Notes under the pieces: model-generated
Seen by the model: only the letters and a program-made list of their open reading frames with translations
Databases searched by the model: none
What the model was told of the DNA's origin: nothing
Made by a program: the position numbers and the translations under genes
Shown: positions 11,134 through 56,073 of the stretch, in pieces
How the letters are laid out: each line of letters starts with the position of its first letter
Position numbering within the stretch: position 1 is the first letter of the stretch
Virus record (IMG/VR): IMGVR_UViG_3300018004_000004
Span: 62,001-126,000 of that record
Length of the DNA stretch: 64,000 nucleotides
Strand: one strand, 5' to 3'

Positions 11134-11137
11134 TCTT

Positions 11138-11483: not shown

Positions 11484-11502
11484 AGTGTAAAGGAAGGAAG
11501 AA

Positions 11503-12258: not shown

Positions 12259-12270
12259 TACTACATGTGA

Positions 12271-12485: not shown

Positions 12486-12502
12486 ATCTGTATAAGACTC
12501 GG

Positions 12503-12703: not shown

Positions 12704-12744
12704 TGTGTTTCTCCTTGTCGGAACCGCTTTGCTCCGAGATTAGA

Positions 12745-39612: not shown

Positions 39613-42600
39613 TTAGATAAGACCCATATTGCGAGCCTGGCGGAACGAGAACATAAGGGGCTCGATTTCGTCTTCCTTGAAATACTGCCACTTTGTCTGC
39701 AAAGTACCCAGAACATCATCCACCTTCCAGCCTTCTAGACCTGAAATCCAGGGTCTCTGGAAACGAGTAAGTGGAGCAATACCCATTGGATTGAGGCGGT
39801 TAACTATCTTACCGGTCCAGAAGATAGCTGCTCCGCCTGCTAGCGCGGCCGGCACAGCAATCCATGGACTGATAGCCGCGGCGCCAATCAAGGCAAGAAT
39901 GCCTAACTCCGCCTCAACCACAGGCAAGTTGGAGCTATTGATTAGAGGATTGTGTATCGTCCAGCCTTCAATCTGGGTTTCCATTCTGGTCAGCATATCC
40001 CACACAGCCTGGTGTATAGGCATGCTCAGCTTATCGTTGATCACGACAAACGCGCGCGGACGTACGATCGTAATGAAACCAGTCTCCTGATTGAATGAGT
40101 GGATCACACTATCAACTTCGACCGGGCCCGAGATGCCGGTGGAAGGATCCAGAAGCATCAGGACATCGAAAGGCTCGATCTCTGGGTTGCCAAGAAGTAC
40201 CAACTCACCACGATAAGCCTTAGCCAGTTCATCACGCAAAAAGCTCTGCATGTAGGCATTCGTATAAGGCGTATCGCCTTTGATGTTCTTCTTGTCCACA
40301 ATGAACGGATCAGCGAGCAACATACGACGATACTGCGAGGGTATCGCTTCATTGGCTGGTAACGTCTGATTCACCAAGCGGACTGTATTGTAAAAGTTCT
40401 CATTCAGATTGATACCGTTATGAATGATGTTATCACCATTCACTAAGTGCCAACGACGGACGGGCTTCATACGAGCATTCACAGCCAGATTAGCACCTGG
40501 TTGAGTCTGTTGATTTAGCCAGGTGTAGTAGTTCTGGACTAGTTGCTGAAGACCTTGTTCTCCCTGGAATGGAGAGATTGTTTTGCCAGGAGACGTGCCT
40601 ATAACCAGGCCAAGAGAAGAAACATTACTTGCCATCTGCTGCGCGAAGATGTTAGTGATGTTGAAGAAGACTCCAGGCCCACCACCATTGATGTAACCTA
40701 TCATCTTGTCAGCGGCCGCATTAGGACTTTGTAAAGTTGCACCTACAGTAGCTATAAAGAAAGTATAGAACTCTGAGCCTTCTGTGGCGCCATTCAGAGT
40801 ATATTCATATTGGTTCTCTGCACTAGAAGCCCATTGAGAACCAACACCGTTGCAGAAAGCCCTGAACTGAGCCTGTCCACTATTGGTACCACCTGTCCAC
40901 CAGAGATTAAACTGGATCGTATCTGAAGCCGCTTGCTGCTGCAACTCGACCTCGCCTGGGACTGGCGTACGCGAAGAATAGAAATCATGTGGATTAGCAA
41001 ACACAAGGGTAGCATCCGCAGTATATGGAAAACCATATTGCTTAACGGCGAGAATGAACTCAGGATAGCGACGAGCAATATCCTGGATATACGTCCAAGG
41101 AGTCATAATAGAATCCTTGGGGATGTAGTACTCTGGCGAACCGTAGCCGCCTGGCAGTTCATACCACCACGTACGAGCTCCACCCTTTGCATCAGCTATA
41201 GCTGTACCATCTGGTCCAAAGATGTGTGTTGTTAGGATATTCTCAAAGCTACGATCGTAGCCTGATTCTAATCCAGTTGCCCCAGCCGTCAGAGGTGAAC
41301 TGCTAGCCAGAATCAAAACCGAACCCAGCAGGGTGTTCCAGTTATGGCCCTTGATGTAGTGATCCGTCGGAGCGCCAAGCTGCCAACGACCAAAATGCTT
41401 AGCTGTGCTGACACTCAGCATGGCACTCATAACGTCAGCCACAGTCCCACCTGGAGAGTTAAGGCCAGGAATCTTGTAGCCTCCAACAGTACTGTTGCCT
41501 CCGAAGGCAGGTGTGTTACCGAAGATACCACCAAGCAAATCACCTGGGATACTAGGTATATTGCTAGGAAAATCACGAACACTCTTTACAAGAGCATTGG
41601 TCAGCTTGTTGATACGCCCATCAACCGTAAATCCATCCTTACGGATCTCATCTTGGGCCGGCACAACTAGCTCCAGCATGTAGCTCTGGCAGACGATCGA
41701 GAGGATCTCATCACCCTCGATTTGTGTTACCTGGCCGGTAAAGACAGGCACAAGCAAATCAGGATTATTCGAGAACCCCATGCGCACCTGTACCTTAGTA
41801 CCGGTCTGTAGAGCAAAATAACGAAGCGGGAACTTGTTATCGACCTGGCGATTCGATGTGGTAGTATCAACAGGACGATGGGCCGCGATCTGAGGGAATC
41901 GATTATCAAGAGTCCATGCATCAGCTGTGGGCTGATTGATATCCATACTAGCCACACCACCAGCAGGGATGACAAGCTGCTGATCGGCTGGTATGTTAGT
42001 TGTTACCGGCGCGTGCAGTCTTGCTTCCTGGCGGCCTTGCGGCGTACCGTCAAACATGTGTTGATCCAACATGTGCAGGAGATTGGAGACCTGAATGACC
42101 GCTGTGTCGGGTCTATCCCGATAGCGAATGATCTCCATATCAAGAACCGTAGCATACGAGTAGAAGTTATCGTAAGCGTAGAACGGTTTCTGCGCGTTGT
42201 CTTCCATCAGGAACAACTTGAATGTGGGGAATGCCTTGGACATCGTGTAGCTAGAAGGCTTAACATTTGAAATGATAGCCTGTGCATTACCCGTGAAGGA
42301 TGCTGTATTTGTATGAACCAGCTTCCCTGTATCGACATTAGGGGTTACTTGTTCGAAGTTTGTTACCGAAGTCATTGTCTGCGAAACAATGGAAGTGATC
42401 TGCTTCTGCATGCTGGCAATCAGGTCAGCATTGTCATCATGGAAGTACATGGCCGGATTGTTATCGCGGCCGACGTATGTAACATCTTTGAGACCCATAT
42501 CCAGATAGCACGAGTGTCCTGGGAGCTGAGCATTACCAGGTGTGGTAATCGTCTGTGTTGTCACAAACATAGGTTTCAGCTGTGGAGACGACTGCGCGCG

Positions 42601-45468
42601 TTGCATTTGGTCACGAATCAACTGATAGTTGTTAGCATAGGCAAAACCCACAAACTGATCCCATAGCTGATTGACCGGTGACTCTAAAGCAGGATCTGCA
42701 GCCAGAGCTGCAGAGACACGGGCATCAATATTCTTGGAGTAGGTTTGAAACAGCTGATAATCCGGCAGCTCGGATAGAGTTGGCCAGTTCTTAATCAGGA
42801 AATAGTCGGAATAGTTTAACTGACCACCATGACTCTTGATTCGATTCGCTATATCTGGGAAGTCTTCGGTGAAGGTATTATCTCTCAGACCTGTTAGGCT
42901 GCTTGGAAACTCATCTAGCAACTTAACCATCAGCAGTTGCTCCTGTTGCTCGAAAGGAGCAGGAGACAGCACATTGTAAGCTTCACTAGAGATAGGAGGA
43001 GGAGCCAGAAAATGCGTAAGCGCTTGCTGCACCGCTGTGCCTAATGCAACACCCCCAATAGCACCTGATACTGCACCTCCGGCTGGTGTTACAGTCGGTG
43101 ATTGCTGAGTTAACCAGTTCCACAAGAACTGATTAGCTTCTGCTCCAGTAGCAGTAGTCCCTGTCACTGAAGAAACAGCGGTCGATACTGTATTTGAGTA
43201 CGTCATCATCTTTGCCAAGTTCACCAAGGCAGTGAGCGATGTATCACCAGAGAAGTCATTGACGATCGTGCCGTCACGCAGGATCTTCAGCCAGATTTGA
43301 GAGAATCCAAAGGGTGTTGTATTCACCTGATATGGATTTGGACCCTCAGCATAATAGACGTTCTCATATTGAATGGCATTGTACTGGGCAGTTACTTCAC
43401 TTGCTGCTTCAGGTATAGTCTCAGTTGTCAGTTCCTTTGTCAACAAGCCGCGAATACCCAGCATGTTAAGGACTTGGTTCTGGACTGCTATCGATTGCAT
43501 ACGATGAATAGAGTTCACACGGCGCCACTCATTGCGCAGGCTCTGGAACTGATCTTCCAGCATCTTAGTCATATTGGATAGCAAGCTGAGTCCAGTATGT
43601 TCCGGTTCCGGATAACTATCAGCTTCTGGGATCTTGGCATTCGACAGCAACCCAACAGATACCAATGTAGACCCAGGACCCAAGTGCTGATAGGTAGGAT
43701 ATTGATATCCAGCCAATGGTATCTGAGAGATGTTATTGACGAACACAACGGAGATCTGCATCGGATAGATAAAGTGTTCTGGATCTATATCTTCGATATC
43801 CGAGCTGGCCGGCTGATCATCATTCTCCTTCGCTGTCATCTTGATGTAGTGTTCTTTGTATAGGAACGCAGCAGACTCAGTAGCATAATCATACGTATAG
43901 TTGTTGTTCAACAGATAGCGAATCTGCGTTGTCATCGGCGGTGGGGTTGTCGCAGTCGGTGGCGGGTTGGTTGAGTTAGAAATGTTTGGAGGTGTGTTTG
44001 TGTTATTACCGCTTACCACTGGAGTGGTATTCGTTGCCGGGTTAGGATTACCAGCAGGCGGTATTGTACCTTCCTGAGGAGTGAAAGCATTTGGATCATT
44101 CGATAGTGTGCGGTAAGTATTCGTAGCCTTCGTGAACCAAGTGTTATCCATACTTGGAGAACCTTGTCCATTATTCACGATGCCTTGTCCAAAACGATGT
44201 GCTTCCCAAGCCGACAGAGCAGAACCATTGTTAGCACGCAGCTTGAGAATAGCCCAACCTGTAGCCATGTCATTCTGAAGCTGGGCTTGTCCACCTGTGA
44301 TAGGCGGGCTCATCATCCAAGAGATATAGGTTGCCAATACAGGATCTGTTGACTGCGGACTTGGAACAGACTTAGAGCCCCAGTTGTATCCATTGTTGGT
44401 ACGAGCAGCAACTAGATAACCACTCTGCACAGCCACAGAAACATAGTGTGTGCCAAGATAAGTATCAGCTGCCTTCATAGCATCAATAGCAGCCGCGCGC
44501 ACCCACTGCAGAAGACCTACTGCAGCCGAAGGCTTGCCGGTATTGGTCACTGTAGACTTGTTGATCGCCGAATAGTTATTATTGGATTCCGGAAAGGCAG
44601 CAGACTTCACCCACCACTGAATAGCAGGATTATGGATATCAGTTGTGTCGATAATGATGTTATCTACGAAGTTTCCAGCGCTGGCTTTCCCCTGCGCAGC
44701 AGTACCTTGTCGAGTGGCTCCAGGATTGGCTGGATTGAGGGCTCCAGATCCGGCCGGCGGAGGATTGAGACCTGTATCGTTAGGCAGTGCACAAGCAGCA
44801 TACTCGCGCGCAGTAAACGTAATACTACCAGGTATTTGTCCCTGCCAGTTCGTGGAGGAGACAGTCATACCTGTATCAGGCTGTTGGGTAGGATCACTAT
44901 TCAGATTCGTCTGGATCCAGTTCAACAAGTAAGCTGTGAAAAGTGGCGAGTTCAGAGCACTGGAAGTAGAGTTGCCTGTCCAATCATCATACTGGAAGTT
45001 CTTGGAGTACGGACGATAGTTGAAGTACGACATCGTCATGGTAACTTGCAGTGTGTCAATCAAATCAGGATTAGTTTCCACACGCATCTGACGCAGAGCA
45101 AAAGCCATAACGTCATCTGCAGTAGCTCCTTGAGTTAGAACTGCAGGGTTCACGATCTGACGGATATGATCGTTCTCTACTTCAACGAAGGGAGCAGCCT
45201 TAAACATAGCCAGGAGCATCTGTACATCAGTCCATGCTGAGTAGTCGGCATTATCATAATCAGCAACGCACTTCCAAGTCCACGTTACATCCCAACGCGA
45301 CTGACCAGTCTTGATAGGAATAGCGAACGGGAAGCGCAGAGGCATAACCTCTTCTCCGTTGATAACCTTGTGGCACTGAATCTGTTCCGGAGGAATGTTC
45401 AGTACAAGGTTACCAATACGGAAGTATCCCGCTTGATTGTCATCTCGAGTTGTGATTATCTGTCCCAT
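39613..45468 (-). CDS. baseplate hub-like protein with lytic transglycosylase (SLT-like) insert
   Basis: LQTGTKVQVRMGFSNNP..L.PVFTGQVTQI and YRGELVLLGNPEIEPFD hub motifs; FPESNNN.SA.N...SAAVGLLQWV SLT motif; C-terminal hydrophobic segment. Confidence 0.8.
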   Translation of the reverse strand: MGQIITTRDDNQAGYFRIGNLVLNIPPEQIQCHKVINGEEVMPLRFPFAIPIKTGQSRWDVTWTWKCVADYDNADYSAWTDVQMLLAMFKAAPFVEVENDHIRQIVNPAVLTQGATADDVMAFALRQMRVETNPDLIDTLQVTMTMSYFNYRPYSKNFQYDDWTGNSTSSALNSPLFTAYLLNWIQTNLNSDPTQQPDTGMTVSSTNWQGQIPGSITFTAREYAACALPNDTGLNPPPAGSGALNPANPGATRQGTAAQGKASAGNFVDNIIIDTTDIHNPAIQWWVKSAAFPESNNNYSAINKSTVTNTGKPSAAVGLLQWVRAAAIDAMKAADTYLGTHYVSVAVQSGYLVAARTNNGYNWGSKSVPSPQSTDPVLATYISWMMSPPITGGQAQLQNDMATGWAILKLRANNGSALSAWEAHRFGQGIVNNGQGSPSMDNTWFTKATNTYRTLSNDPNAFTPQEGTIPPAGNPNPATNTTPVVSGNNTNTPPNISNSTNPPPTATTPPPMTTQIRYLLNNNYTYDYATESAAFLYKEHYIKMTAKENDDQPASSDIEDIDPEHFIYPMQISVVFVNNISQIPLAGYQYPTYQHLGPGSTLVSVGLLSNAKIPEADSYPEPEHTGLSLLSNMTKMLEDQFQSLRNEWRRVNSIHRMQSIAVQNQVLNMLGIRGLLTKELTTETIPEAASEVTAQYNAIQYENVYYAEGPNPYQVNTTPFGFSQIWLKILRDGTIVNDFSGDTSLTALVNLAKMMTYSNTVSTAVSSVTGTTATGAEANQFLWNWLTQQSPTVTPAGGAVSGAIGGVALGTAVQQALTHFLAPPPISSEAYNVLSPAPFEQQEQLLMVKLLDEFPSSLTGLRDNTFTEDFPDIANRIKSHGGQLNYSDYFLIKNWPTLSELPDYQLFQTYSKNIDARVSAALAADPALESPVNQLWDQFVGFAYANNYQLIRDQMQRAQSSPQLKPMFVTTQTITTPGNAQLPGHSCYLDMGLKDVTYVGRDNNPAMYFHDDNADLIASMQKQITSIVSQTMTSVTNFEQVTPNVDTGKLVHTNTASFTGNAQAIISNVKPSSYTMSKAFPTFKLFLMEDNAQKPFYAYDNFYSYATVLDMEIIRYRDRPDTAVIQVSNLLHMLDQHMFDGTPQGRQEARLHAPVTTNIPADQQLVIPAGGVASMDINQPTADAWTLDNRFPQIAAHRPVDTTTSNRQVDNKFPLRYFALQTGTKVQVRMGFSNNPDLLVPVFTGQVTQIEGDEILSIVCQSYMLELVVPAQDEIRKDGFTVDGRINKLTNALVKSVRDFPSNIPSIPGDLLGGIFGNTPAFGGNSTVGGYKIPGLNSPGGTVADVMSAMLSVSTAKHFGRWQLGAPTDHYIKGHNWNTLLGSVLILASSSPLTAGATGLESGYDRSFENILTTHIFGPDGTAIADAKGGARTWWYELPGGYGSPEYYIPKDSIMTPWTYIQDIARRYPEFILAVKQYGFPYTADATLVFANPHDFYSSRTPVPGEVELQQQAASDTIQFNLWWTGGTNSGQAQFRAFCNGVGSQWASSAENQYEYTLNGATEGSEFYTFFIATVGATLQSPNAAADKMIGYINGGGPGVFFNITNIFAQQMASNVSSLGLVIGTSPGKTISPFQGEQGLQQLVQNYYTWLNQQTQPGANLAVNARMKPVRRWHLVNGDNIIHNGINLNENFYNTVRLVNQTLPANEAIPSQYRRMLLADPFIVDKKNIKGDTPYTNAYMQSFLRDELAKAYRGELVLLGNPEIEPFDVLMLLDPSTGISGPVEVDSVIHSFNQETGFITIVRPRAFVVINDKLSMPIHQAVWDMLTRMETQIEGWTIHNPLINSSNLPVVEAELGILALIGAAAISPWIAVPAALAGGAAIFWTGKIVNRLNPMGIAPLTRFQRPWISGLEGWKVDDVLGTLQTKWQYFKEDEIEPLMFSFRQARNMGLI

Positions 45469-48400
45469 TAGGATTCCAGTTGTTCTCGAATCGTCTCACG
45501 ACGGCGGAGAGTACTCATCTTGTTTCTCCATCCGTTGCGATAGTTCACATTGATATTTGATACACCATTATTGCCAGAGATCTGACTAATCATACGTTGC
45601 ATTTCAATCGTATCCTGGCGATTCTGAGCCTTCATTCTTACTTCCAGATCTGTACGCTGGCGCATTGGCGCCACGATCGTTGTAGATGTACCACCGCGCA
45701 GAGGAAGCTGACGACGAGGTGGGTTAACAGAAGACATAGCACCGGTTATTGGCTCGCCCGGGACCTGATCTGTTACAGTCTCAGTAGTTTCTGGTCTGAA
45801 GTTCCCACGCGGCCGACCGAAAGTAGCCTGCGTCGGAGTAACCTTCTTGACATGGCTGGTAAGAACTGCTCCTACAGCCGCGGCTCCGACTCCAATAGCC
45901 AGAACACCTAGGTTACCTTTGGACTCTCTGTAAGTACTCTTGAGACCCTCATTGATGGCGCCGAGGACTTTGGAAACAGACATCCCCGAGCCTTTCTCGC
46001 GCGCCAGGCCAATCAGCCAAGGAGGAGGCGTACCCATCTCCTTGTACAAGGCCTGCAGACGATAGAGGGAATCACCCTCCATATCCGTAGTTGCCTTAGT
46101 CAGAAGTTCGGCAGCACGATCTGCCCTAACATTACGCCCTATGATAAACTCGGAGAGTGTTCCTTGGAACTTCTCGGAGTCCAGCACGTCCATCAAAACA
46201 TTCCGCTTGGTGCCGGGAGCTACCCTCATCCCAGTAAGCTCTTCAAACAAAGGAGCGGTCTCTGCAGTAATGATCGATTCCTTACCGTAGCCAGAGATAA
46301 CTTCCCTCATACCCTCGGTGAACTTAGCTACACCTTCCGGCGTGCGAGATTCCAAGCCACCTACCAATCTTCTGTACAATCCCAGAGGATCCTCAGGATT
46401 CAACTTCATCTTGCCCTTCTGGGCAGAGATAGGTACCTGACGGATCGTCCACAGCATGTGACCGAGGATATCTCTTTCCATCGGCTTCACACCGATTGTA
46501 GGATGCATCTCGACGTTCATGTACAAGCGAGTCAGTAAGTTAGAGTACGCACCAACCACACCACCAGCCATACGCTGTGTGACTTGTTCTGCTCTTCCAC
46601 CTGCACTAGCCAACTTAAGACTTTCTTCAAGCATAGAAGGCAGAGTCTTCACACCAGCTTCTGCGATGTTACGTGAGTCTTCAACGCTCCCGTACAGCAT
46701 CTCAAGAGTCTTCAGGCTTCTCCACTGGTTGCTATTCAGAGCATTGATAGCAGCCTGGGCTTCACGTTCGGCTTGAGAACCCTTGCGATAGAAGAACAGA
46801 TTCAGGATATCCTTATCGTCATCGGCGCCGAACAAGCCACGGATGCGCTCATCCATACCGACCATGTTAGGACCCATGCCAGCATCAGGAGCCACCTTCA
46901 CACGCATGTAAGGAGCTGACTGAATAGGGTGACGAGCAGCCGTAGCGTAGATATCTTCTCCGGCGAGTAATGCTTTACGGATCTCTGGGTCGCGGACTCG
47001 GCCGGCCATCTGCTCATTGATAAGGAGTTCAAATGGGTTTTCCTGGGCGCGCGTCTGAATGAAACCAGACACAGCTCCCAAGACATCTGTACCACGGGCA
47101 CGGTAGAATCCTTCCTTCCCGAACAGTACACGCTGGGCTTCATCAAGGTGAGCGGAGATCGCCGCGGACATCATAACGGGATCCTTCTGCCACTTGACTA
47201 CGTCCGCCAGCGTCTTTTCATAATCCGTGGGGCTATAAGTAAGACCCTCACCAACCTTTTCATAGAGGTTGCTACCACCGCCGTGTGCCAACTTACCAAG
47301 GACAGGAATGTGAGTAACTTCAAGGTCACGTCCAGCCACACGTGCGTACACCGGCTGATCAAGTTTGATAGAAAAGTTCTCTTGGACGAGCTTATTTGAG
47401 GGATCAAAGATACCTCCAACTCGGCCTTCCATCGTGCCTATTCTGAGATTGGCTGCAGCCTCCTCTATGGGGATAACAGTCCCCAGAGACTTGGTGAAGT
47501 CACCACCTACGAACTGGGCAGCAAAAGCAGAAGCTCTTCCCGGATCGCCACCATGGAAATCCAAGCGGCTCATCAACTCCTTCATACCTTCCACATTACC
47601 AGCTCTCCACATCTCGGAGAACATATCGTATGTGGCGCCGACCATCTGAGGTACATTACGGCGAGTGCTATCCCAGAACGCCGCAAAGGAGAACATGGCG
47701 TTCTTCTGCATGTAGTTCATCAGACTTTCTTCACCGCTACGTCTGAAGGCAGAGAAGAGCTCACCCTCGGTCCCAGGAGCACCACGCTGAGCAAAGCCAG
47801 CAACATCACGCAGGTAGTCTTCTGTAAGTTGACCCACCGACTGCATACGGAGTCGACGGCCCTCCAGATCCAGGCTGCGTACGTATTCCGAATCTTCGAG
47901 CAGATGGAAGACGTTATTTCCAGTACCAGTACGCTGCGCGCGAATACCCTGAGCAGCAAGATCAGCCATGTACTTATTGACACGATCCAATGCTTCCAGG
48001 TTTGCCCAGTCAGCCTTTAGATGCACACTGTTAGCAGCAATATCGCTAGACACAGCAGCTGCTTGCGATACCATAAGGCGGAAAGGATCGCTAGTCTTAG
48101 CTTGCATGTAGTGTAGCGGAGCTAGAGCTTCCACAAAGCTAGGGATAGCAGTCTTAGATCCAGTAGCTTCACCGTATAGATTCAGCAGCTCGACCTGGCG
48201 ACGGAAGATGTCTTCCTCGGGTACGATAGCCAGACCCTTCACGCCAGCGATGTCAATCTTGGCTCCTGTCTCTACTGGATACTCTTGACGCAGCTTGAGC
48301 TCGAACTGGCCGCTAGGTGTAGTGGACCAGCCTTCTATGAATGTAGAAGGAGCTTCCGACGTGACAGGATTCAAACCCTCAAATCCGATTAGTGTCTCTG

Positions 48401-50237
48401 GGCTAAGGGACTTTTTGATGTAATCCTCGGGGTTGAGATGAAGCTTGTCGACGTAGACGTTCTTACGCGACTCCATCTTCAGCCGGCGGAACTTCTCGTG
48501 AAGGATAATATCACCTTCACCCAACCCACCCAAGCCACGGCCGGCTTCTAGATAGCCCTTCTCGCCGAGCTTACCACTGATCTTACCCCAAGCAGCCTCT
48601 GCCTGGGCGCGTGTCATCTTTGGATTGTCGGCCAGTATGCGTTGGATAGCAGTCTCTTTATAGCCAGCCAATCCTTCTGCTGTTTTCGGCAAGTCGCCGA
48701 ACAGCGACTTCTGTTGTGGCGACACACCAGCCACGGACATCTGTATTTCCGGAACACCTCCGATGGATTCAACCGCGGAAGTTGTAAAGCTTGGACGGAA
48801 CTCCTCACCAATGGTCTCAGCTTTCAGCTGCAAGTCCTTGGTGAAGGATCTATAGAAATACGTTTGCTTAGCGAGCGAAGGCGCACCTCCCGGGATGTAG
48901 AGTTCCGATTCAGCGAACTCGAACACACCTTTCGATGTGCCTCCCTCAGAACCAATGCGAGTCATACCACGACCCAGCATCTTGATAGTGTACTGGATCC
49001 GTTCCAGGTCTGACAGATCCTCAAATGCCTTGCCTCCATAAATAGGCAAGCTGCTAGGAATAGCAGCGCGAGAACGGATATACAGAGCTTGTGGAGAAAG
49101 GTTAGCAAGCTGGGATTCAAGACGTGTTTGAAGCTTGAATGGATCTTCGGGGACCACGCCGCCGAAATAAGCAGCACGACCAATATCACCTTTCAGCTTT
49201 CCCCAATCCTGAGTCAGGTGTTCAGCAACGAATGTATCCAGTTCGAATACTCGTTCTGGCGTGTGAATGTGGCGCCCGACTCCAACCTTGCCTTCAATGT
49301 TGACGGATCCTGTCTTGGGATCAAACAGAGGGATATGAAGCTCGCCCTTTGGACCCTTGATGTTGACACCCAGCATACGGCCGACAGTTCCATCTGCCAC
49401 CTGCTCGGCAACGACCGTAGCAGAGGACACCTGTCCCTGACGGATCGCGCGCTGAATAGCATCAGCTACTTCTGGACGCTGACCGTGCAACTGACCATAA
49501 GCTTCCAGCCACTCCATACTAGTAGTCTTACCAGTCATGCTCATCTTGAGTGGATTGGCAAACGGACCGAGATCCTTGAGCTTCTTGGCCCAGCCAAGAC
49601 GGCTACTCAGCTCCTTGACGAAGCGGGGATCAGCTCTATTGGCGTTGACGATACCACGGAGCTCTGACTCTGCCATGCCGGCCAGAGGACCTCCGCGCGC
49701 AACTCTAGTAAGATCTAGCGGAGAAGCTACCCGCTGTCTGGCGCCTTCCACAGCATAGGTAAGCAGATCACGCTTGTTAGACATGCCCAGAAGCTCATGA
49801 AAGAGGTTCTCCGCCTGCTCCATGCTCTTCTCGATCGGTGGCCCACCGCGGTCAACCTGGCTGAAGAAATCTACGGCCGCATTGTCGGCCCAGGTACGGA
49901 AGATGGGATTGAGAGCTCCTGCACCCCCACCTGTCTTTTCCAGAGCTGAACGTAAGTCCTTGAATCTAGTAGCTTTATTGCTACCAAAAAACATAGGCAT
50001 CTCACGTGCGAACTGCATGCCAGCTCGAGCTGTACGGGAGGCAGATGTTACCAAGCCCGGGCCGGCAAGACCCATAGCCGCTACAATAGGGGTAGTTATG
50101 ACGGCAGTCCGGAAGTAACCGCGGTTCTCATCCTTAAGGAAAATAGGGGCCGTAGCCGAGGCAAAGGCAGTGGCAAAGGCCACACCTGGATGTTCAGTTG
50201 CAAGGCTTTTAACGGCTTTTAGGAACCCGGTAAACAT
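45468..50237 (-). CDS. candidate single-chain two-barrel (DPBB) virion RNA polymerase at the tape-measure position
   Basis: Beta-like GAKIDIAGVKG, then beta'-like ARHP...GLFGADDDKDILNL (DxDxD); hydrophobic termini. Confidence 0.72.
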   Translation of the reverse strand: MFTGFLKAVKSLATEHPGVAFATAFASATAPIFLKDENRGYFRTAVITTPIVAAMGLAGPGLVTSASRTARAGMQFAREMPMFFGSNKATRFKDLRSALEKTGGGAGALNPIFRTWADNAAVDFFSQVDRGGPPIEKSMEQAENLFHELLGMSNKRDLLTYAVEGARQRVASPLDLTRVARGGPLAGMAESELRGIVNANRADPRFVKELSSRLGWAKKLKDLGPFANPLKMSMTGKTTSMEWLEAYGQLHGQRPEVADAIQRAIRQGQVSSATVVAEQVADGTVGRMLGVNIKGPKGELHIPLFDPKTGSVNIEGKVGVGRHIHTPERVFELDTFVAEHLTQDWGKLKGDIGRAAYFGGVVPEDPFKLQTRLESQLANLSPQALYIRSRAAIPSSLPIYGGKAFEDLSDLERIQYTIKMLGRGMTRIGSEGGTSKGVFEFAESELYIPGGAPSLAKQTYFYRSFTKDLQLKAETIGEEFRPSFTTSAVESIGGVPEIQMSVAGVSPQQKSLFGDLPKTAEGLAGYKETAIQRILADNPKMTRAQAEAAWGKISGKLGEKGYLEAGRGLGGLGEGDIILHEKFRRLKMESRKNVYVDKLHLNPEDYIKKSLSPETLIGFEGLNPVTSEAPSTFIEGWSTTPSGQFELKLRQEYPVETGAKIDIAGVKGLAIVPEEDIFRRQVELLNLYGEATGSKTAIPSFVEALAPLHYMQAKTSDPFRLMVSQAAAVSSDIAANSVHLKADWANLEALDRVNKYMADLAAQGIRAQRTGTGNNVFHLLEDSEYVRSLDLEGRRLRMQSVGQLTEDYLRDVAGFAQRGAPGTEGELFSAFRRSGEESLMNYMQKNAMFSFAAFWDSTRRNVPQMVGATYDMFSEMWRAGNVEGMKELMSRLDFHGGDPGRASAFAAQFVGGDFTKSLGTVIPIEEAAANLRIGTMEGRVGGIFDPSNKLVQENFSIKLDQPVYARVAGRDLEVTHIPVLGKLAHGGGSNLYEKVGEGLTYSPTDYEKTLADVVKWQKDPVMMSAAISAHLDEAQRVLFGKEGFYRARGTDVLGAVSGFIQTRAQENPFELLINEQMAGRVRDPEIRKALLAGEDIYATAARHPIQSAPYMRVKVAPDAGMGPNMVGMDERIRGLFGADDDKDILNLFFYRKGSQAEREAQAAINALNSNQWRSLKTLEMLYGSVEDSRNIAEAGVKTLPSMLEESLKLASAGGRAEQVTQRMAGGVVGAYSNLLTRLYMNVEMHPTIGVKPMERDILGHMLWTIRQVPISAQKGKMKLNPEDPLGLYRRLVGGLESRTPEGVAKFTEGMREVISGYGKESIITAETAPLFEELTGMRVAPGTKRNVLMDVLDSEKFQGTLSEFIIGRNVRADRAAELLTKATTDMEGDSLYRLQALYKEMGTPPPWLIGLAREKGSGMSVSKVLGAINEGLKSTYRESKGNLGVLAIGVGAAAVGAVLTSHVKKVTPTQATFGRPRGNFRPETTETVTDQVPGEPITGAMSSVNPPRRQLPLRGGTSTTIVAPMRQRTDLEVRMKAQNRQDTIEMQRMISQISGNNGVSNINVNYRNGWRNKMSTLRRRETIREQLES

Positions 50238-50307: not shown

Positions 50308-53300
50308 TTAGCTGGTGCTCTCTTCCCGGTACTCGTCCTCATTCCGGCGAATATCCCGCATAACCTCTTTGTCTCCCTGTTCGTCGACGCTTATAGACAC
50401 GTTGGAGCCTGCCACTCGGTTAGGACCGCCCGAGGAGACCACTTGCGGATTCTTATCTTGTCCCTCGAGGATAATACGCTCCACAGTTTGTCGTATGCGT
50501 TCTGTAGGTTGTGAACCGCTAGAAACAAGTTCTCGCACAGCTCCATCGATGTAGGGCTTGCGCCAGAGGAGGGCTGCCCGGTCGTCGTAGATGTTGAAGT
50601 CGTGGTAATCATAGCCTTCGTTCTGAATAATCTTAAGCTTGACATCCTCATAGTCAATGCCTTGCTCCCATAGCGGAGAACCAGGACCGGGGATATCAAA
50701 GCCGAGCTTGCCAAAGGTTTCGGCGATTTGCTTCGAACGGATGTAGTCTGCGTAGCTGAGGTCTGTTTTCGCTTGCTCATACTCTTTGAGGCCTTCCTCT
50801 GTGTAGAGGACTCCGCCTTCTTCAATGGCTGGTATTATCTTGCCCGCGAGGCGAGCAAGCATAGCATCAGTTTTTACCCACTGAGCAGTAAGGGCTCGGG
50901 CTAGTTCCGGAGAGACAGATTCAAGAATCTGCTGGCGCTTGTCCGGATCTGTTTCTTGGAGGAATGCTGGGAAGTAAAGCTTCTCGCGCCGAGGGAGGGT
51001 TTGAGAGACAAACTGAGGATTGCCAAAGAGATTGGCACCAATATTCGTTCTCTTACCCTGACTAGTATACCTGCCTTTCTGGCCTGGATGCGCTCCTGCC
51101 TGCACATCTGCACGCAGATATTCCAACTCATCGACCAAGCTATCCATTAGACGGCGATGTTCGACTTCTTCCGGCACCAATACACCGCCAGTGAAACGAC
51201 GGTAGGTACCGCGGGCCCATGCAGCAATCATATCATGGAACGGCTTCTGCCATCTACGCATGCGCGCGCCGTAGACTTCCTGTTCCTGATAGAGAGACAA
51301 AGCTGTGCGCTCATTCCAGTACTTTGTGTGGAATGGAGTTGGTACGAAGCGGAGAGGTCCACCCTCACCTGTGAAGGCCAGAGTCTCGGCGTACTTACCG
51401 AGAGCTACCTGGGTGGAGGAATACATGGCCTGAGCTTCTGCCCCGCCGTAATCCTTTCTGAACTGTCCGAGACCTCGATCGATGATTTCTTTGTTGATAT
51501 TAACATCATCAATGAAGATGACAGCACGAGACTCAGCCGCATGCTCTTCAGTACCCTTAGGCACAACAAGAGTAGCCTGCATGCCAACCTGGCTAGACAA
51601 GTAATCATCCAGAGAAGCTTGTTTCTCCGTAACGGCCTTAGCACTCTGAGAGCGAGTAAGTTCATTCTCCTCGCCGAGTGTTGTAGCTGAGAGATCGGAA
51701 GCAGACATACCAAGAGAACTGAATATGAACTTGCGTCCTGGATACTGCTCCAGCTCAATACCTTCTGGTGTAGCCTTGGTGATCGTTCCTTGGATCTGTT
51801 CGATCGAAGCAGTGAAACGACGCTGACCGAACTGGATCGTCGATTCCTTCATCTGGCGCACTTGATCTTCAGTGCGTGCAAACTCGATCTCCAGACGAGC
51901 ATCTCTCTGTGCGGCCGCGCGCACCTTGGAGCGATAGATCATGTACTCCTTACTCCAAGGAGCAACATCAGCCAGAATCTTGTAACGATAGATGTCTGGG
52001 TATTCTTCTGCCTTCAAGCCACGAAGCTCTGGATGCAGAGCAGCATAACCACGGCCTGGAAGACGAGCACCACCTTCCGGTATCTTGGCGAACGGATCGC
52101 CAGTACGGAAGTTGATCATGTAATCTTCGCCAGGCAGCCAACGAGGCATTGTATTCGGGATCTCATTAGCTTGCGGAGCTAGCTTATCAGGCTGAATGAA
52201 ACGGCGGAGAGGTTCTGAATAACCGAACGGCATGCCACCAGTTCCGCTAGGGTTGAAGCCAGACACAGCACCCAACTCACGCTGGTAGTACTGACGGGAC
52301 AGATTCGTCATTTGACGACTGCCCTGCAATACAACATCTTGACCCGGTGTTCCGGCGCCAGGAGTTCCAGCCTTACCATAAAGGGTTGTAGCTATGAACC
52401 CAGGCAGACCTGTATATTCAGCAAAGGCCAGCGCTTCACGACCGACAACATCCTTGAAGCCAAACTCCTCACGAGGCCGAGATGGCGCCAGGCCACCCAA
52501 CGCCATGTTAGGTTCTAGACGCGGGCTATACAACGTATAGTTGTTGATGTCCCATTCGCCTTGGTGCATTCTCTGTGTTGGCTTTACGATGCGGCCGACT
52601 GTGGCAGCCAGCAGCGGACCAATGAGAGGCACGTTGGAGAAAGCAGGAGATGTGATTGGGTATGGACGGCTAGCGTAGTTCGCGCGTTCCAGCCAGTATG
52701 GATCCTTTATGTACTTGAACGGATGCAGCAGTGGGTGATGTTCCCAGTATGCATCTTCCGAACCATAGGTCGATACCATCTCGGCCTTGGTCTTCATCAA
52801 CTGATACCAGTGCGGACGGAAGTACTTGATGCGACCGCCACTGAACGGAGTGGAACCTACATCCCACCAACGGCCGGCGCGGATTGGAACTTCTTCTTCA
52901 CCAGAGTAGATGCGTTGCAGCTCATCTTCAGTCTTACGGCTGCCCAACATACCAGGCACGAAAGGCAGAGCCAGCAAAGCACCGATACCTGCACCCTTCC
53001 AGAAGGCCTTGTGAGAAGCAGCTACTCGAGCAGCGTGGACTGGGAACTCTTGGGCGCCACGAGCAATGTTGACCCAGTGAATACCTGCACCAATAGCACC
53101 AGCTCCGATAGGCAGAGCTAACGGACCATACTGCGGACCTGGTACGATCTCTTCGTACTTATCTGTGATCGCACGGAGGCCTGGGATTGCGTCGGTTGCG
53201 CGCGCCCAGGCAAGATGAGCCTTAAGCGGAACCTCGGCGAGCGTCTCAGCTGGTTTATTTCCCAGCTGGTAGTTGATGTAACGTGCGGCCGTGATAGCAA

Positions 53301-55233
53301 GATATGCAGGCAGCACACGCTTGAGCATCAGCGCATTGAGCATTCCGCCTTCGCCGGCGAACGGAATGTGGAACAGTTTGTTGTATGAGCCCTTAGGCAG
53401 ACCCATACCGATATCAGACAACAGACGGAGTGGGCGCTCAGCAGCTTCGAATGCTACACGTTGACCTGTTCTGTAGGCCGATTCGATACCACCCACGAGT
53501 CCAGGCTGACGACCGTAGAGAGGTTCGAAGAACTGGAACTCTCCACCAATCTGTCTCTTGAAAGCCTGTCCCTTTGTGAGGGGAGTTCCTGGTCTCTGGC
53601 TGGCGCGGAGATTCTGGAACATCTCCCACATCTCAGCAAGAGGACCTTTGTCAGTCAGTGTACGAGGGAATACCTGTTCGCGGAGCTTGGCGCCAAAGGC
53701 AGCCGATGATCCTGTCAGCCGGCCGCGTTCGGCAAAGCGAATAGCTTCACCGCGGCCGCCAACCAAACTCAGATACGGAGAGGAAGCTGAGGTTCGAGTG
53801 AACCTCATTCCTGTCTTAGCAAAGCGTTCATCCAGGGCGCTGACACCAATCAGGCGCTCGATGTGCTTACCCATCTCGGTAAGCTCAGAACCGCGTATCA
53901 GTTGTTCGGCCGCAAAGGAAACTTCCTCTGGCAGATAACTGGACATGCGCTGAGACAGACCGAAGGTACGGAAGAGGCCGCCAGGCGAACGCGCTTCTAC
54001 CGTCTTCATGAACTGATAGACGCCCTCAGCATAGCCAGACCAGTTCTTAAGAGCAAACTTATGTGCTCCTACAACTGCGGCGCCACCAGCCAACCAGGCA
54101 GCTACCTTCAGAGTATTGCGATCGTCCTGTCCATCCCAACCGGATCCAAAATCAGTCAAGGCATGACGGCTCTCAGCAGCCAGACCTGTACCACTCAAAC
54201 CGGTGATCTGAGTCTGACGATCGCTTCTCTTGCTGCTTGCGATAGCCCACGCTGCGGTTGCCGCGGCAGCAAAGACCAGGGCAACAGAGATACCCTTTCC
54301 TATGGCACTGACTTTGTTAGGCAGGACCTTGGCACCACGCTCAGCCTGAGCAGCTACCTTCTCAGCCCAGGGGCTGGCATAGATCTTGGAGAAGAACGTC
54401 TCGGCAGTCTCACCTGGGGGCAAGAGTTGTGCAGAGCCCAGAGCTTCTTCCCAACTGTGCCCACGCTGTAGGTTTCTCTTGGCTGTGCGCAGGCGCTCAA
54501 AGAGGGTCTGCTCGACCTTGACGTCAGTCACAGCCTCATGATAGCCGGCAGCTCCAGCCAGCTTGGGACCCATGAGTCTTTCAAGTCCGCCGGCCGCACC
54601 AGCAATATTCTCAACCTTCCAGCCAGGAACCCACTGCATCTCCTCTACGTTACGCGCCAGCATACCTGGGCCGGTAGTCTTGGAGATAGGAGTGGATGGG
54701 CCCATGCGCAGGTGACGTTCTGCGAAAGCTGGGTTGTCTTGTCCGTAACCCAGCGCCAGTTCAAAGAATGACTGCTCCAAGCCGAATACCTTTACTCCCT
54801 TGCGCTTGAAGAAGTCCTTGTATCCAGCGAGGCTGGGATAACGGCCGGCGATCTCAGTGAGCACACCAGTATCGTACTTGACATTCCAGCCAGTCAGTAG
54901 GAAACGCTTCTTACGAGAGAGTTCTTCTTCGGCCGAGGCAAAGAAGCGTCGAGCTGCTTCTTCTTCACCGACCTGACCAAGCTTCATAGCCTGAGAAAGA
55001 ACTTGCTCGCCTTTCGCATAGTTGTACGCAAACGGGATATGAATCCCGCTCACAGGATCGGTATATCCAGTGCGAGGCTTTACTAATGTGGTGGGATGAA
55101 ACGGGGATGCTACGTAAGGAGGGAGTTTTGAAGCGAAGATCTGGAGCAGGCCTGTGTTCTTATGTCCAGCGGACAGGCCTGTAGTCTCGACGTCGAGAAC
55201 ATGAAAGAAATGCTTTTGATGCCAGGTTGCCAT
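50308..55233 (-). CDS. tape-measure-like protein with N-terminal DEDDh 3'-5' exonuclease and a degenerate SNase-like domain
   Basis: LDVETTGL, GWNVKYD, YHEAVTDV; several Gly/Ala hydrophobic segments; RAVIFIDDVNINKEIIDRGLG. Confidence 0.78.
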   Translation of the reverse strand: MATWHQKHFFHVLDVETTGLSAGHKNTGLLQIFASKLPPYVASPFHPTTLVKPRTGYTDPVSGIHIPFAYNYAKGEQVLSQAMKLGQVGEEEAARRFFASAEEELSRKKRFLLTGWNVKYDTGVLTEIAGRYPSLAGYKDFFKRKGVKVFGLEQSFFELALGYGQDNPAFAERHLRMGPSTPISKTTGPGMLARNVEEMQWVPGWKVENIAGAAGGLERLMGPKLAGAAGYHEAVTDVKVEQTLFERLRTAKRNLQRGHSWEEALGSAQLLPPGETAETFFSKIYASPWAEKVAAQAERGAKVLPNKVSAIGKGISVALVFAAAATAAWAIASSKRSDRQTQITGLSGTGLAAESRHALTDFGSGWDGQDDRNTLKVAAWLAGGAAVVGAHKFALKNWSGYAEGVYQFMKTVEARSPGGLFRTFGLSQRMSSYLPEEVSFAAEQLIRGSELTEMGKHIERLIGVSALDERFAKTGMRFTRTSASSPYLSLVGGRGEAIRFAERGRLTGSSAAFGAKLREQVFPRTLTDKGPLAEMWEMFQNLRASQRPGTPLTKGQAFKRQIGGEFQFFEPLYGRQPGLVGGIESAYRTGQRVAFEAAERPLRLLSDIGMGLPKGSYNKLFHIPFAGEGGMLNALMLKRVLPAYLAITAARYINYQLGNKPAETLAEVPLKAHLAWARATDAIPGLRAITDKYEEIVPGPQYGPLALPIGAGAIGAGIHWVNIARGAQEFPVHAARVAASHKAFWKGAGIGALLALPFVPGMLGSRKTEDELQRIYSGEEEVPIRAGRWWDVGSTPFSGGRIKYFRPHWYQLMKTKAEMVSTYGSEDAYWEHHPLLHPFKYIKDPYWLERANYASRPYPITSPAFSNVPLIGPLLAATVGRIVKPTQRMHQGEWDINNYTLYSPRLEPNMALGGLAPSRPREEFGFKDVVGREALAFAEYTGLPGFIATTLYGKAGTPGAGTPGQDVVLQGSRQMTNLSRQYYQRELGAVSGFNPSGTGGMPFGYSEPLRRFIQPDKLAPQANEIPNTMPRWLPGEDYMINFRTGDPFAKIPEGGARLPGRGYAALHPELRGLKAEEYPDIYRYKILADVAPWSKEYMIYRSKVRAAAQRDARLEIEFARTEDQVRQMKESTIQFGQRRFTASIEQIQGTITKATPEGIELEQYPGRKFIFSSLGMSASDLSATTLGEENELTRSQSAKAVTEKQASLDDYLSSQVGMQATLVVPKGTEEHAAESRAVIFIDDVNINKEIIDRGLGQFRKDYGGAEAQAMYSSTQVALGKYAETLAFTGEGGPLRFVPTPFHTKYWNERTALSLYQEQEVYGARMRRWQKPFHDMIAAWARGTYRRFTGGVLVPEEVEHRRLMDSLVDELEYLRADVQAGAHPGQKGRYTSQGKRTNIGANLFGNPQFVSQTLPRREKLYFPAFLQETDPDKRQQILESVSPELARALTAQWVKTDAMLARLAGKIIPAIEEGGVLYTEEGLKEYEQAKTDLSYADYIRSKQIAETFGKLGFDIPGPGSPLWEQGIDYEDVKLKIIQNEGYDYHDFNIYDDRAALLWRKPYIDGAVRELVSSGSQPTERIRQTVERIILEGQDKNPQVVSSGGPNRVAGSNVSISVDEQGDKEVMRDIRRNEDEYREESTS

Positions 55234-56070: not shown

Positions 56071-56073
56071 AGA

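What the first reader, a model, noticed from the sequence alone, without database searches (positions are those of the whole stretch)
45468..50237. Candidate tail-delivered single-chain two-barrel RNA polymerase with a non-standard DDDKD active site
Seen: a 1589-aa protein directly upstream of the baseplate hub, where a tape-measure gene is expected. It contains GAKIDIAGVKG (48234-48266) and, ~440 aa later, ARHP (~46926-46937) followed ~30 aa later by GLFGADDDKDILNL (GADDDKD at 46809-46829). It has hydrophobic segments at both ends. Established: two-barrel RNAPs have a beta-barrel GDK...G.KG motif and a beta'-barrel R.P...(N/G)ADFDGD motif. Single-chain versions include SPbeta YonO, crAss-like phi14:2 gp66, and the tape-measure-fused virion RNAP of Thermus phage P23-45. 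Inference: this is a very divergent virion RNAP ejected through a contractile tail. It keeps the three Mg-binding Asp (DxDxD) but replaces the usual F and G with D and K.
Basis: partly seen in the sequence, partly recalled or inferred. Interest (0 to 1): 0.92.

Follow-up and report, generated by a model that had tools for sequence, protein, structure and literature searches.

The report
RNA polymerase hidden in phage tail
A 1589-residue protein encoded in the tape-measure position of a jumbo phage's contractile-tail genes is predicted to fold as a complete single-chain cellular-type RNA polymerase, so the phage probably injects its own transcription enzyme through the tail.

Summary
ORF 45468-50237 (-) encodes 1589 aa, and every quoted motif sits at the stated coordinates.

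The RNA polymerase (RNAP) reading is strongly supported:
- In 43 homologues down to 22% identity, only 13 columns are invariant. Three are D1139, D1141 and D1143.
- P1104 is invariant. R1102 (42/43), K660 (41/43) and K667 (40/43, the rest R) are nearly so.
- Distant members carry the canonical ADFDGD.
- An AlphaFold2 model of residues 241-1440 (pLDDT 91.5, pTM 0.90) matches only RNAP large subunits in the PDB.
- The N-terminal half, modelled alone, matches only beta/Rpb2-type subunits.

So this is a beta-beta' fusion-like enzyme. No sequence method finds it (Pfam, PHROGs, PDB profiles, hhalign).

DDDKD is not unprecedented: the Bacillus phage AR9 non-virion RNAP is listed with the same motif.

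The gene lies between a homologue of a proteomics-confirmed virion protein and the baseplate hub. This is the slot of the putative tape measure of Bacillus phage 0305phi8-36, and the order is conserved in relatives. Hydrophobic segments flank the core.

Delivery through the tail and catalytic activity are inferred, not shown. Acinetobacter phage ME3 gp036 is a structural counterpart in a cultured phage.

Verdict: a new variant of a known kind.

The parts
45468..50237 (-). Whole gene: 1589-aa single-chain two-barrel RNA polymerase candidate
   Evidence: ORF list and translation. There are 20 close and 79 representative homologues, mostly 1500-1700 aa.
50049..50192 (-). N-terminal hydrophobic region (residues 16-63), conserved in the family; putative membrane-insertion or tail-lumen anchoring segment
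   Evidence: Hydropathy peak at 45-63. The N-terminal pattern is conserved in the family consensus.
47418..49517 (-). beta-like module (residues 241-940) containing barrel B
   Evidence: Separate AlphaFold2 model with pLDDT 92.3. The top 41 Foldseek PDB hits are all second-largest RNAP subunits: vaccinia Rpo132 at 4.6e-7, then Rpb2, A135, C128, archaeal B, bacterial beta and AR9 7s01_C.
48234..48266 (-). Barrel-B lysine motif GAKIDIAGVKG (K660, K667)
   Evidence: K660 is kept in 41/43 and K667 in 40/43 (+3 R) homologues. In the model the motif lies in strands 419-423 and 426-431.
45993..47417 (-). beta'-like module (residues about 941-1415) with barrel A, bridge-helix candidate and following helices
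   Evidence: In the Foldseek PDB search of the 241-1440 model, all 50 listed hits are RNAP large subunits. The best are beta' chains of E. coli and M. tuberculosis, AR9 7s01_d, Pol IV NRPD1 and Pol I A190.
46926..46934 (-). R1102-H-P1104, the RxP element 37 residues before the first catalytic Asp
   Evidence: R is kept in 42/43 and P in 43/43. It aligns with the RAP of E. coli beta' and the REP of ME3 gp036.
46809..46823 (-). Catalytic triad D1139-x-D1141-x-D1143 (DDDKD)
   Evidence: All three Asp are invariant in 43/43. Positions 2 and 4 vary, and DFDGD occurs in P0062, P0063 and P0074. The same DDDKD is listed for the AR9 non-virion RNAP.
46506..46604 (-). Long helix, residues 1212-1244: bridge-helix candidate
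   Evidence: A 33-residue helix in the model, at model residues 972-1004. R1222, G1229, S1232 and N1233 are nearly invariant. A pairwise alignment to the E. coli beta' bridge helix shares A.S..LTR, which is suggestive only.
45849..45917 (-). C-terminal hydrophobic, transmembrane-like segment (residues 1441-1463)
   Evidence: Hydropathy. It is conserved as a Gly/Ala/Leu-rich stretch in the family consensus.
45471..45848 (-). Strongly conserved C-terminal tail (residues 1464-1589); putative docking region for tail or hub
   Evidence: R1481 and G1499 are invariant and many other columns are nearly so, at 22-30% overall identity. The function is inferred.
50308..55233 (-). Upstream giant gene (1641 aa), homologue of virion protein ORF145 of 0305phi8-36 and of ME3 gp035
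   Evidence: BLASTP 1e-46 to ME3 gp035 and 1e-26 to ORF145. ORF145 is recorded as a virion protein by mass spectrometry in the record's annotation.
39613..45468 (-). Downstream giant gene (1951 aa): baseplate hub with a cell-wall lytic domain. Its ATG overlaps the candidate's stop codon (TAATG).
   Evidence: PHROG endolysin family at residues 1742-1818. BLASTP and tblastn hits to ME3 gp037 and 0305phi8-36 ORF147. Junction sequence.
55504..56553 (-). Two small genes (159 and 188 aa) in the position of the tail chaperone pair
   Evidence: Position only, by comparison with ME3 gp033/034 and 0305phi8-36 ORF143/144.
60018..62483 (-). Tail sheath gene of the same module
   Evidence: PHROG tail sheath 2e-42. 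tblastn hits to the sheaths of ME3 and 0305phi8-36.
36890..38092 (-). Baseplate J-like wedge gene of the same module
   Evidence: Pfam Baseplate_J 7.9e-23 and PHROG baseplate wedge 1.4e-34.

Best explanation
The gene encodes a single-chain, two-barrel, DNA-dependent RNA polymerase built like a fusion of a beta-type module (about residues 241-940, with barrel B and lysines K660/K667) and a beta'-type module (about residues 941-1415, with RxP, the D1139/D1141/D1143 magnesium site and a bridge-helix-like long helix). Conserved hydrophobic segments and a conserved C-terminal tail flank this core.

The fold and the conservation of the catalytic residues are shown here, by prediction and by alignment.

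The rest is inferred. The protein is made late with the tail. It is stored in or at the tail lumen in the place of, or next to, the tape measure. When the sheath contracts it is expelled ahead of the DNA. Its hydrophobic ends anchor it at the inner membrane. The refolded core then transcribes the first-entering genes independently of the host polymerase, and may help to draw in the genome of at least 215 kb.
For: Conservation:
- Only 13 of about 1590 columns are invariant in 43 homologues (mean column identity 23%). Three of them are the DxDxD aspartates, and P1104 is another.
- R1102, K660 and K667 are kept in 93% or more of the homologues.
- Distant members have the canonical ADFDGD.
- One member gives a sub-threshold Pfam RNA_pol_Rpb1_2 hit at exactly this site (E 0.032).
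- Motif order and spacing arise in 1 of 20,000 shuffles.

Structure:
- Template-free AlphaFold2 model: pLDDT 91.5, pTM 0.90.
- Foldseek against the PDB gives 80 hits at E<=1e-3, and the 50 listed are all RNAP large subunits.
- The N-terminal half alone hits only beta/Rpb2-type subunits, down to 4.6e-7.
- BFVD hits are a 'minor tail protein', ME3 gp036 and giant-virus and poxvirus RNAP subunits.
- DDDKD is also listed as the motif of the AR9 non-virion RNAP (PMC10770324 Supplementary Data 4).

Delivery:
- The gene order is sheath, tube, chaperone-like pair, ORF145-like virion protein, this gene, hub, baseplate J.
- The same order is kept at homologues of 57%, 30% and about 24% identity.
- The stop codon overlaps the hub gene's start.
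- The slot corresponds to 0305phi8-36 ORF146, a mass-spectrometry-confirmed virion protein assigned as tape measure.
- Hydrophobic termini.
- Precedent: the tape-measure-fused virion RNAP of P23-45 (PMC10770324).
Against: - There is no experimental or proteomic evidence for this protein or any sequence homologue.
- No sequence method links it to any RNAP: Pfam, PHROGs, PDB profile searches, and hhalign to gp96, beta and beta' are all non-significant.
- The fold assignment therefore rests on a predicted model. Global TM-scores to solved RNAPs are low (0.11-0.27), because only the cores align.
- I could not read the coordinates, so the juxtaposition of the Asp triad and the lysines was not measured.
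- A compact core of about 1200 residues cannot act as an extended ruler or pass through a tail tube while folded.
- The adjacent giant gene, rather than this one, follows the chaperone-like genes directly.
- 0305phi8-36 ORF146 has no DxDxD, so positional equivalence does not prove the same function.
- No second (non-virion) polymerase or promoter set was looked for outside the window.
Confidence: 0.62

Rival explanations
1. It is an active two-barrel RNA polymerase but not a virion component. It would be a late-expressed, non-virion polymerase, perhaps membrane-tethered, that merely sits in the tail operon.
For: Nothing here shows virion incorporation. Phages with two-barrel polymerases often have non-virion enzymes, such as P23-45 gp64, 0305phi8-36 orf99 and YonO. 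The compact predicted core (pTM 0.90) looks unlike a lumen protein.
Against: The position is strictly conserved, and the reading frames overlap between a virion-protein homologue and the hub in relatives from 24% to 57% identity. The terminal hydrophobic segments and the conserved C-terminal tail have no obvious role in a soluble polymerase. A polymerase made only with late structural genes would arrive too late to be useful unless it is packaged.
Confidence: 0.15
2. It is a structural tail protein (tape measure or lumen plug) that descends from a polymerase but no longer catalyses RNA synthesis.
For: It occupies the slot assigned to the tape measure in 0305phi8-36, and that protein has no DxDxD. 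Positions 2 and 4 of the motif drift freely.
Against: The three Asp, RxP and both lysines stay fixed while the rest of the protein falls to 22% identity, which is the signature of selection on catalysis. A predicted globular alpha/beta core is unsuited to measuring length.
Confidence: 0.07
3. It is a two-barrel nucleotidyl transferase with another activity: RNA-dependent RNA synthesis as in QDE-1, priming, or DNA synthesis as in archaeal PolD.
For: The two-barrel superfamily includes RNA-dependent polymerases and PolD. The fold alone does not fix template or product.
Against: All listed Foldseek neighbours are DNA-dependent RNAP subunits. Neither PolD, nor QDE-1, nor RDR2 appears in the listed top 50 of either PDB search.
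Confidence: 0.08

Closest known systems
Thermus phage P23-45 gp96, the tape-measure-fused virion RNA polymerase (PMC10770324)
   Same: Both are single-chain two-barrel polymerases with barrel B before barrel A. Both are encoded in the tail module at the tape-measure position, and both are proposed to enter the cell through the tail and transcribe the first genes.
   Different: - gp96 is 5002 aa, with the polymerase as its N-terminal part of about 1200-1540 residues, fused to a long tape. It belongs to a non-contractile siphovirus tail.
- Here the protein is 1589 aa, almost all polymerase core. It has hydrophobic ends, sits in a contractile-tail jumbo phage, and has a separate giant neighbour.
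- No sequence similarity is detectable.
- gp96 was not in the listed top 50 PDB hits.
- Only a weak BFVD hit to a P23-45 protein was found (E 1e-2).
Multisubunit RNAP beta and beta' subunits, including the jumbo phage AR9 non-virion RNAP (PDB 7S01) and the poxvirus Rpo132/Rpo147
   Same: These are the nearest structural neighbours of the two halves. The RxP...DxDxD and GxK...GxKG motifs match, and a bridge-helix-like helix is present. The DDDKD motif is identical to the one listed for the AR9 non-virion RNAP.
   Different: Here everything is in one chain of about 1200 core residues, with no alpha, omega or other subunits evident. In AR9 and phiKZ the subunits are split further, not fused. No sequence-level similarity reaches significance.
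Acinetobacter phage vB_AbaM_ME3 gp036 (1603 aa, annotated as hypothetical)
   Same: - It occupies the same slot, between the ORF145-like gp035 and the hub gp037.
- Both halves match the model structurally (E 1.6e-6 and 6.8e-4).
- Its own family keeps K632/G637/K639, R1174-E-P1176 and D1217/D1219/D1221 invariant, in the same order.
- It has a similar hydrophobic N-terminus and a C-terminal transmembrane-like stretch.
   Different: Sequence homology is not established: the profile-profile comparison gives E 0.041 and probability 1.3%. The spacing between barrels is about 100 residues longer. The motif is DHDQD.
Other single-chain phage and fungal two-barrel polymerases (SPbeta YonO, crAss-like phi14:2 gp66, Neurospora QDE-1)
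   Same: One polypeptide carries both barrels. gp66 is virion-packaged and ejected.
   Different: QDE-1 and gp66 were not among the 50 listed PDB neighbours of either model. gp66 is packaged in a short-tailed virion and is not encoded in a tape-measure slot. YonO and 0305phi8-36 orf99 are non-virion enzymes of the RdRP-like clade.
Bacillus phage 0305phi8-36 ORF146, the putative tape measure
   Same: It has the same position in a homologous tail module, and it is a virion protein by mass spectrometry.
   Different: It is 2537 aa, has no DxDxD and shows no detectable similarity. It was assigned as tape measure from the correlation with tail length.

Membership tests
Two-barrel (double-psi beta-barrel) RNA polymerase superfamily | beta'-type barrel carrying an invariant DxDxD, preceded by [RK]xP 20-100 residues upstream | tested here: met
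   D1139, D1141, D1143 and P1104 are invariant, and R1102 is kept in 42/43. The offset is 37 residues. [quoted passage not shown]
Two-barrel (double-psi beta-barrel) RNA polymerase superfamily | beta-type barrel supplying two conserved basic residues | tested here: met
   K660 is kept in 41/43 and K667 in 40/43 (+3 R), within GxK....GxKG. The N-terminal half model matches only beta/Rpb2-type subunits.
Two-barrel (double-psi beta-barrel) RNA polymerase superfamily | The two barrels face each other, so that the Asp triad and the lysines form one active site | not testable with these tools
   Model coordinates are not exposed. The only indirect support is the high pTM of 0.90 for the two-module model.
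Two-barrel (double-psi beta-barrel) RNA polymerase superfamily | Bridge helix and trigger loop after barrel A | tested here: inconclusive
   A 33-residue helix at 1212-1244 has nearly invariant R1222, G1229, S1232 and N1233. The pairwise alignment to the E. coli bridge helix is suggestive only.
Two-barrel (double-psi beta-barrel) RNA polymerase superfamily | Template-dependent RNA synthesis requiring the Asp triad | not testable with these tools
   This needs a biochemical assay.
Tape-measure-fused virion RNAP (P23-45 gp96 type) | Polymerase domain fused to a long tape-measure region of thousands of residues | tested here: not met
   The protein is 1589 aa in total, and residues 241-1415 are folded polymerase core. 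Only about 240 N-terminal and about 175 C-terminal residues remain.
Tape-measure-fused virion RNAP (P23-45 gp96 type) | Homology to gp96 or gp64 | tested here: not met
   hhalign gives E 0.11 and 0.34, which is non-significant. Only a weak BFVD hit to a P23-45 protein was found (E 1e-2).
Tape-measure-fused virion RNAP (P23-45 gp96 type) | Gene in the tape-measure slot of the tail module | tested here: met
   It lies between the ORF145-like gene and the hub, downstream of the chaperone-like genes, and this order is conserved in L001, L006 and L007. Caveat: a second giant gene shares the slot.
Tape-measure-fused virion RNAP (P23-45 gp96 type) | Present in virions and active early in infection | not testable with these tools
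   The phage is uncultured and known only from a metagenomic contig.
Tail tape measure protein | Mostly extended alpha-helical protein whose length sets tail length | tested here: not met
   The model of residues 241-1440 is a compact mixed alpha/beta fold with pTM 0.90.
Tail tape measure protein | Hydrophobic, membrane-active segments and a position before the hub gene | tested here: met
   Hydrophobic segments at 45-63 and 1441-1463. The stop codon overlaps the hub gene's start.
phiKZ/AR9-type jumbo-phage multisubunit RNAP | beta and beta' each split into two or more polypeptides | tested here: not met
   Both modules lie in one ORF. The structural matches to AR9 7s01_d (rank 3) and 7s01_C (rank 40), and the shared DDDKD, show resemblance only.
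YonO / QDE-1 / gp66 clade of single-chain two-barrel polymerases | Nearest structural neighbours are QDE-1 or gp66 | tested here: not met
   Neither appears in the listed top 50 of either PDB search. Every listed RNAP hit is a subunit of a multisubunit-type enzyme.

The most novel reading that the evidence does not exclude
A whole lineage of contractile-tailed jumbo phages, comprising this 215-kb phage, dozens of metagenomic relatives and probably the cultured Acinetobacter phage ME3, has replaced or supplemented the tape measure with a membrane-anchored beta-beta' fusion polymerase. The enzyme would be stored unfolded in the tail lumen and fired into the cell. There it would start host-independent transcription and act as the motor that pulls the giant genome in. 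It would be an independent, multisubunit-lineage origin of tail-borne polymerases, separate from that of P23-45.
Probability: 0.35. Interest if true: 0.9.

Novelty: new variant of a known kind. Interest (0 to 1): 0.78.

Why it matters
Known virion RNA polymerases come from four settings:
- N4-like podoviruses, which have a T7-like enzyme.
- phiKZ-like jumbo phages, which have multisubunit enzymes packaged in the head.
- crAss-like phages, with gp66.
- One siphovirus group, with P23-45 gp96.

A tail-module, single-chain, beta-beta'-like polymerase in contractile-tailed jumbo phages would add a fifth solution. It would show that coupling the transcription enzyme to the tail lumen evolved more than once.

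The family has at least 79 clusters at 50% identity. Neither Pfam, nor PHROGs, nor profile searches against PDB sequences found it, so such phages would be scored as lacking a polymerase of their own.

It is also a compact fusion of both catalytic subunits, about 1200 residues, whose nearest structural neighbours are the multisubunit enzymes. That bears on how cellular polymerases can be minimised.

Phage ME3 is cultured and carries the structural counterpart, so the idea can be tested directly.

Tried and rejected
Sequence-level searches that found nothing significant:
- Pfam and PHROGs on the protein.
- tblastn against 50,697 phage genomes.
- PDB profile searches with 16 and 43 sequences. 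The only curiosity was a designed double-psi barrel, 7dww, at E 0.19 on residues 1114-1142.
- hhalign of the family profile against the P23-45 gp96 N-terminus, E. coli beta' and beta, ME3 gp036 and the gp036 family profile (E 0.041).
- Pfam on six distant members gave one sub-threshold RNA_pol_Rpb1_2 hit.

Leads that went nowhere:
- 0305phi8-36 ORF146, the positional counterpart, has no DxDxD.
- I tried to identify the second ME3 protein that matched structurally (A0A172Q0S6, 798 aa). The only 798-aa CDS found between 20 and 235 kb is gp152. It has no DxDxD and no profile similarity. This remains unresolved.
- The upstream and downstream giant proteins gave nothing against PDB sequences.
- The repeats in 1-12,800, which I searched as possible promoters, are tRNA T-arms.
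- The 'moraphage' paper describes a different, T4-like lineage.

Literature: searches found no description of this family.

Rejected reading: DDDKD as a unique active site, because AR9 is listed with the same motif.

Full report
**1. Observation**

The minus-strand ORF 45468-50237 is intact and encodes 1589 aa.
- GAKIDIAGVKG is residues 658-668 (48234-48266).
- ARHP is residues 1101-1104 (46926-46937).
- GADDDKD is residues 1137-1143 (46809-46829).
- Hydrophobic stretches lie at 45-63 and 1441-1463, with a further Ala-rich stretch at 16-34.

Chance:
- DxDxD alone is not rare. It appears in 10.5% of shuffles of this protein.
- The lysine motif followed by RxP...DxDxD in that order appeared in only 1 of 20,000 shuffles.
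- None of 17 other long ORFs in the window has DxDxD.

**2. Setting**

The window maps at 100% identity to a 215,395-bp IMG/VR contig, so this is a jumbo phage.

The gene order on the minus strand is:
- tail sheath (60018-62483)
- tube-like genes
- two small chaperone-position genes
- a 1641-aa gene
- the candidate
- a 1951-aa gene with a lytic domain
- small genes
- baseplate J (36890-38092)

The only cultured relatives are very distant: Bacillus phage 0305phi8-36 and Acinetobacter phage ME3.
- The 1641-aa protein is homologous to ME3 gp035 (1e-46) and to 0305phi8-36 ORF145 (1e-26). The record annotates ORF145 as a virion protein found by mass spectrometry.
- The 1951-aa protein is homologous to the hub proteins ME3 gp037 and ORF147.
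- The candidate therefore sits in the slot of ME3 gp036 and of ORF146. ORF146 was assigned as tape measure from its correlation with tail length, and its chaperone genes are likewise one gene removed (PMC2147016).
- The candidate's stop codon overlaps the hub gene's start codon (TAATG).
- The same gene order is kept around homologues of 57%, 30% and about 24% identity.

**3. Family and conservation**

No Pfam or PHROG family matches the protein, and no phage genome in GenBank does either. Metagenomes hold 20 close homologues, and the family has 79 representative clusters at 50% identity. Nearly all are 1500-1700 aa.

In an alignment of 43 full-length members (22-59% identical to the query, mean column identity 23%) only 13 columns are invariant.
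- Three of them are D1139, D1141 and D1143, and another is P1104.
- R1102 is kept in 42/43, K660 in 41/43, and K667 in 40/43 with Arg in the other three.
- Positions 2 and 4 of the Asp motif vary freely. Several distant members read ADFDGD, the canonical beta' signature, and one reads ADVDRDAIQMAVH.
- One distant member gives a sub-threshold Pfam RNA_pol_Rpb1_2 hit exactly at this site (E 0.032).

Small alignments put R, P and the three Asp in register with E. coli beta' and with ME3 gp036. The G.KG...P.ED stretch lines up with E. coli beta.

DDDKD is not a new variant. Supplementary Data 4 of PMC10770324 lists DDDKD as the motif of the AR9 non-virion RNAP.

**4. Structure**

A template-free AlphaFold2 model of residues 241-1440, built with 62 sequences, has mean pLDDT 91.5 and pTM 0.90.

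Foldseek against the PDB gave 80 hits at E<=1e-3. The 50 listed are all RNAP large subunits:
- bacterial beta'
- the AR9 non-virion beta' N-terminal part
- plant Pol IV NRPD1
- yeast Pol I A190
- vaccinia Rpo132

To separate the two barrels I modelled residues 241-940 alone (pLDDT 92.3). Its top 41 PDB hits are all second-largest, beta-type subunits: vaccinia Rpo132 at 4.6e-7, then Rpb2, A135, C128, archaeal B, bacterial beta and AR9 7s01_C. Below them the scores drop to noise.

So the N-terminal half is beta-like and the C-terminal half is beta'-like. This is the barrel B then barrel A order of known single-chain enzymes (PMC10770324).

In the model:
- The lysine motif lies in two adjacent strands.
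- The Asp motif lies between a helix and a strand.
- A 33-residue helix (1212-1244) with nearly invariant residues follows, as a bridge helix would.

Limits:
- Global TM-scores are low (0.11-0.27), because only the cores align.
- Neither QDE-1, nor gp66, nor any P23-45 polymerase appeared among the listed PDB neighbours. By fold the enzyme looks closer to multisubunit-type polymerases.

**5. Viral structural neighbours**

Hits in BFVD, in order:
- a metagenomic 'minor tail protein' (E 1.8e-13, TM 0.48)
- an unnamed protein
- a Microcystis phage MaMV-DC protein
- both halves of ME3 A0A172Q021, which is the 1603-aa gp036 (E 1.6e-6 and 6.8e-4)
- another ME3 protein of 798 aa
- a Ma-LMM01 protein, further down the list
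- giant-virus and poxvirus RNAP subunits

ME3 gp036 and its five homologues keep K632/G637/K639, R1174-E-P1176 and D1217/D1219/D1221 invariant, in the same order. Profile-profile comparison does not establish homology (E 0.041). I therefore treat gp036 as a structural and positional counterpart, not a proven homologue.

**6. Mechanism**

Shown, by prediction and conservation: a complete two-barrel polymerase core with its catalytic residues under strong constraint.

Inferred:
- The protein is part of the tail, in or at the lumen, like a tape measure.
- It is expelled when the sheath contracts.
- It is anchored by its conserved hydrophobic N- and C-terminal segments.
- It then transcribes the first DNA to enter, independently of the host enzyme.
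- The model for this is P23-45 gp96, and more loosely N4 and the crAss-like phages.

Against simple tape-measure behaviour: the core is compact and fills most of the chain, so it would have to be stored unfolded or elongated. The neighbouring ORF145-like giant protein may be the real ruler.

Rivals:
- An active polymerase that is not packaged.
- A structural relic without catalysis.
- A different template or product specificity.
- The conserved tail-operon position, the conserved catalytic residues and the Foldseek neighbours make each of these less likely. None is excluded.

**7. Comparison and novelty**

The protein meets the tested defining features of the two-barrel RNAP superfamily.

It does not meet those of the following:
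- The gp96-type fusion: no long tape, no detectable homology.
- The phiKZ/AR9 split enzymes: this is a single chain.
- The QDE-1/gp66 clade: these are not its structural neighbours.

I found no paper describing this family or a polymerase in a contractile-tail module. The survey in PMC10770324 does not list ME3. Only open-access papers and bioRxiv were searchable.

I rate it a new variant of a known kind, of high interest, with a cultured system (ME3) available for testing.

Noticed in passing
window 1610-11483 (+): A dense array of 25 tRNA genes covering most amino acids, plus a phage-encoded tmRNA (11138-11483, tag peptide AEFEELPLAA), interspersed with small ORFs.
   Followed up: partly
window 55239-55559 (-): A 106-aa HesB/IscA-type iron-sulphur cluster biosynthesis gene (Pfam Fe-S_biosyn, 3.8e-18) sits inside the tail module, between the chaperone-position genes and the first giant gene. 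No gene was called at the same position in the 57%-identity relative L001.
   Followed up: no
window 39613-45468 (-); L006 14886-20153; L007 14761-19914: The baseplate hub giants carry different cell-wall lytic domains in different relatives: a PHROG 'endolysin' family here (residues 1742-1818), SLT in L006 and Peptidase_M23 in L007. This points to domain swapping at the tail tip.
   Followed up: no
L003 13173-17984 (Acinetobacter phage ME3 gp036): This annotated 'hypothetical protein' of a cultured phage has the same slot and similar length. It carries invariant K...GxK, REP and DHDQD motifs, and both halves match the candidate's model structurally. It is probably the same kind of tail-module polymerase.
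   Followed up: partly
BFVD entry A0A172Q0S6 (ME3, 798 aa); L015 24454-26850: A second ME3 protein of 798 aa matches the model (E 7.5e-6, TM 0.45). The only 798-aa CDS I found (gp152) has no DxDxD and no profile similarity, so its identity and meaning are unresolved. I did not examine the first 20 kb of ME3.
   Followed up: partly
BFVD entries A0A075BUT7_2 (Microcystis phage MaMV-DC) and A0A7J4_2 (Ma-LMM01): Large uncharacterised proteins of cultured Microcystis phages also match the model (E 1.5e-6 and 5.7e-4). They might be further members of this kind.
   Followed up: no
L001 23274-23975: A GIY-YIG/NUMOD3 homing endonuclease gene is inserted next to the baseplate J gene in a relative. It is absent from the window.
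   Followed up: no
window 58158-59138 (-): The PHROG label 'major head protein' for this ORF looks like an inherited misannotation. ME3 gp030, next to the sheath gene, is likewise labelled 'major head protein', yet its own note links it to the 0305phi8-36 'major structural protein', which that record marks as tail tube. By position this ORF is more likely a tube paralogue. No direct comparison was run.
   Followed up: no
window 5398-5451 (+): Four overlapping 27-nt copies offset by 9 nt, giving a 9-nt periodicity (GCAGCCCCA-like, Ala-Pro rich), inside ORF 4969-5466.
   Followed up: no
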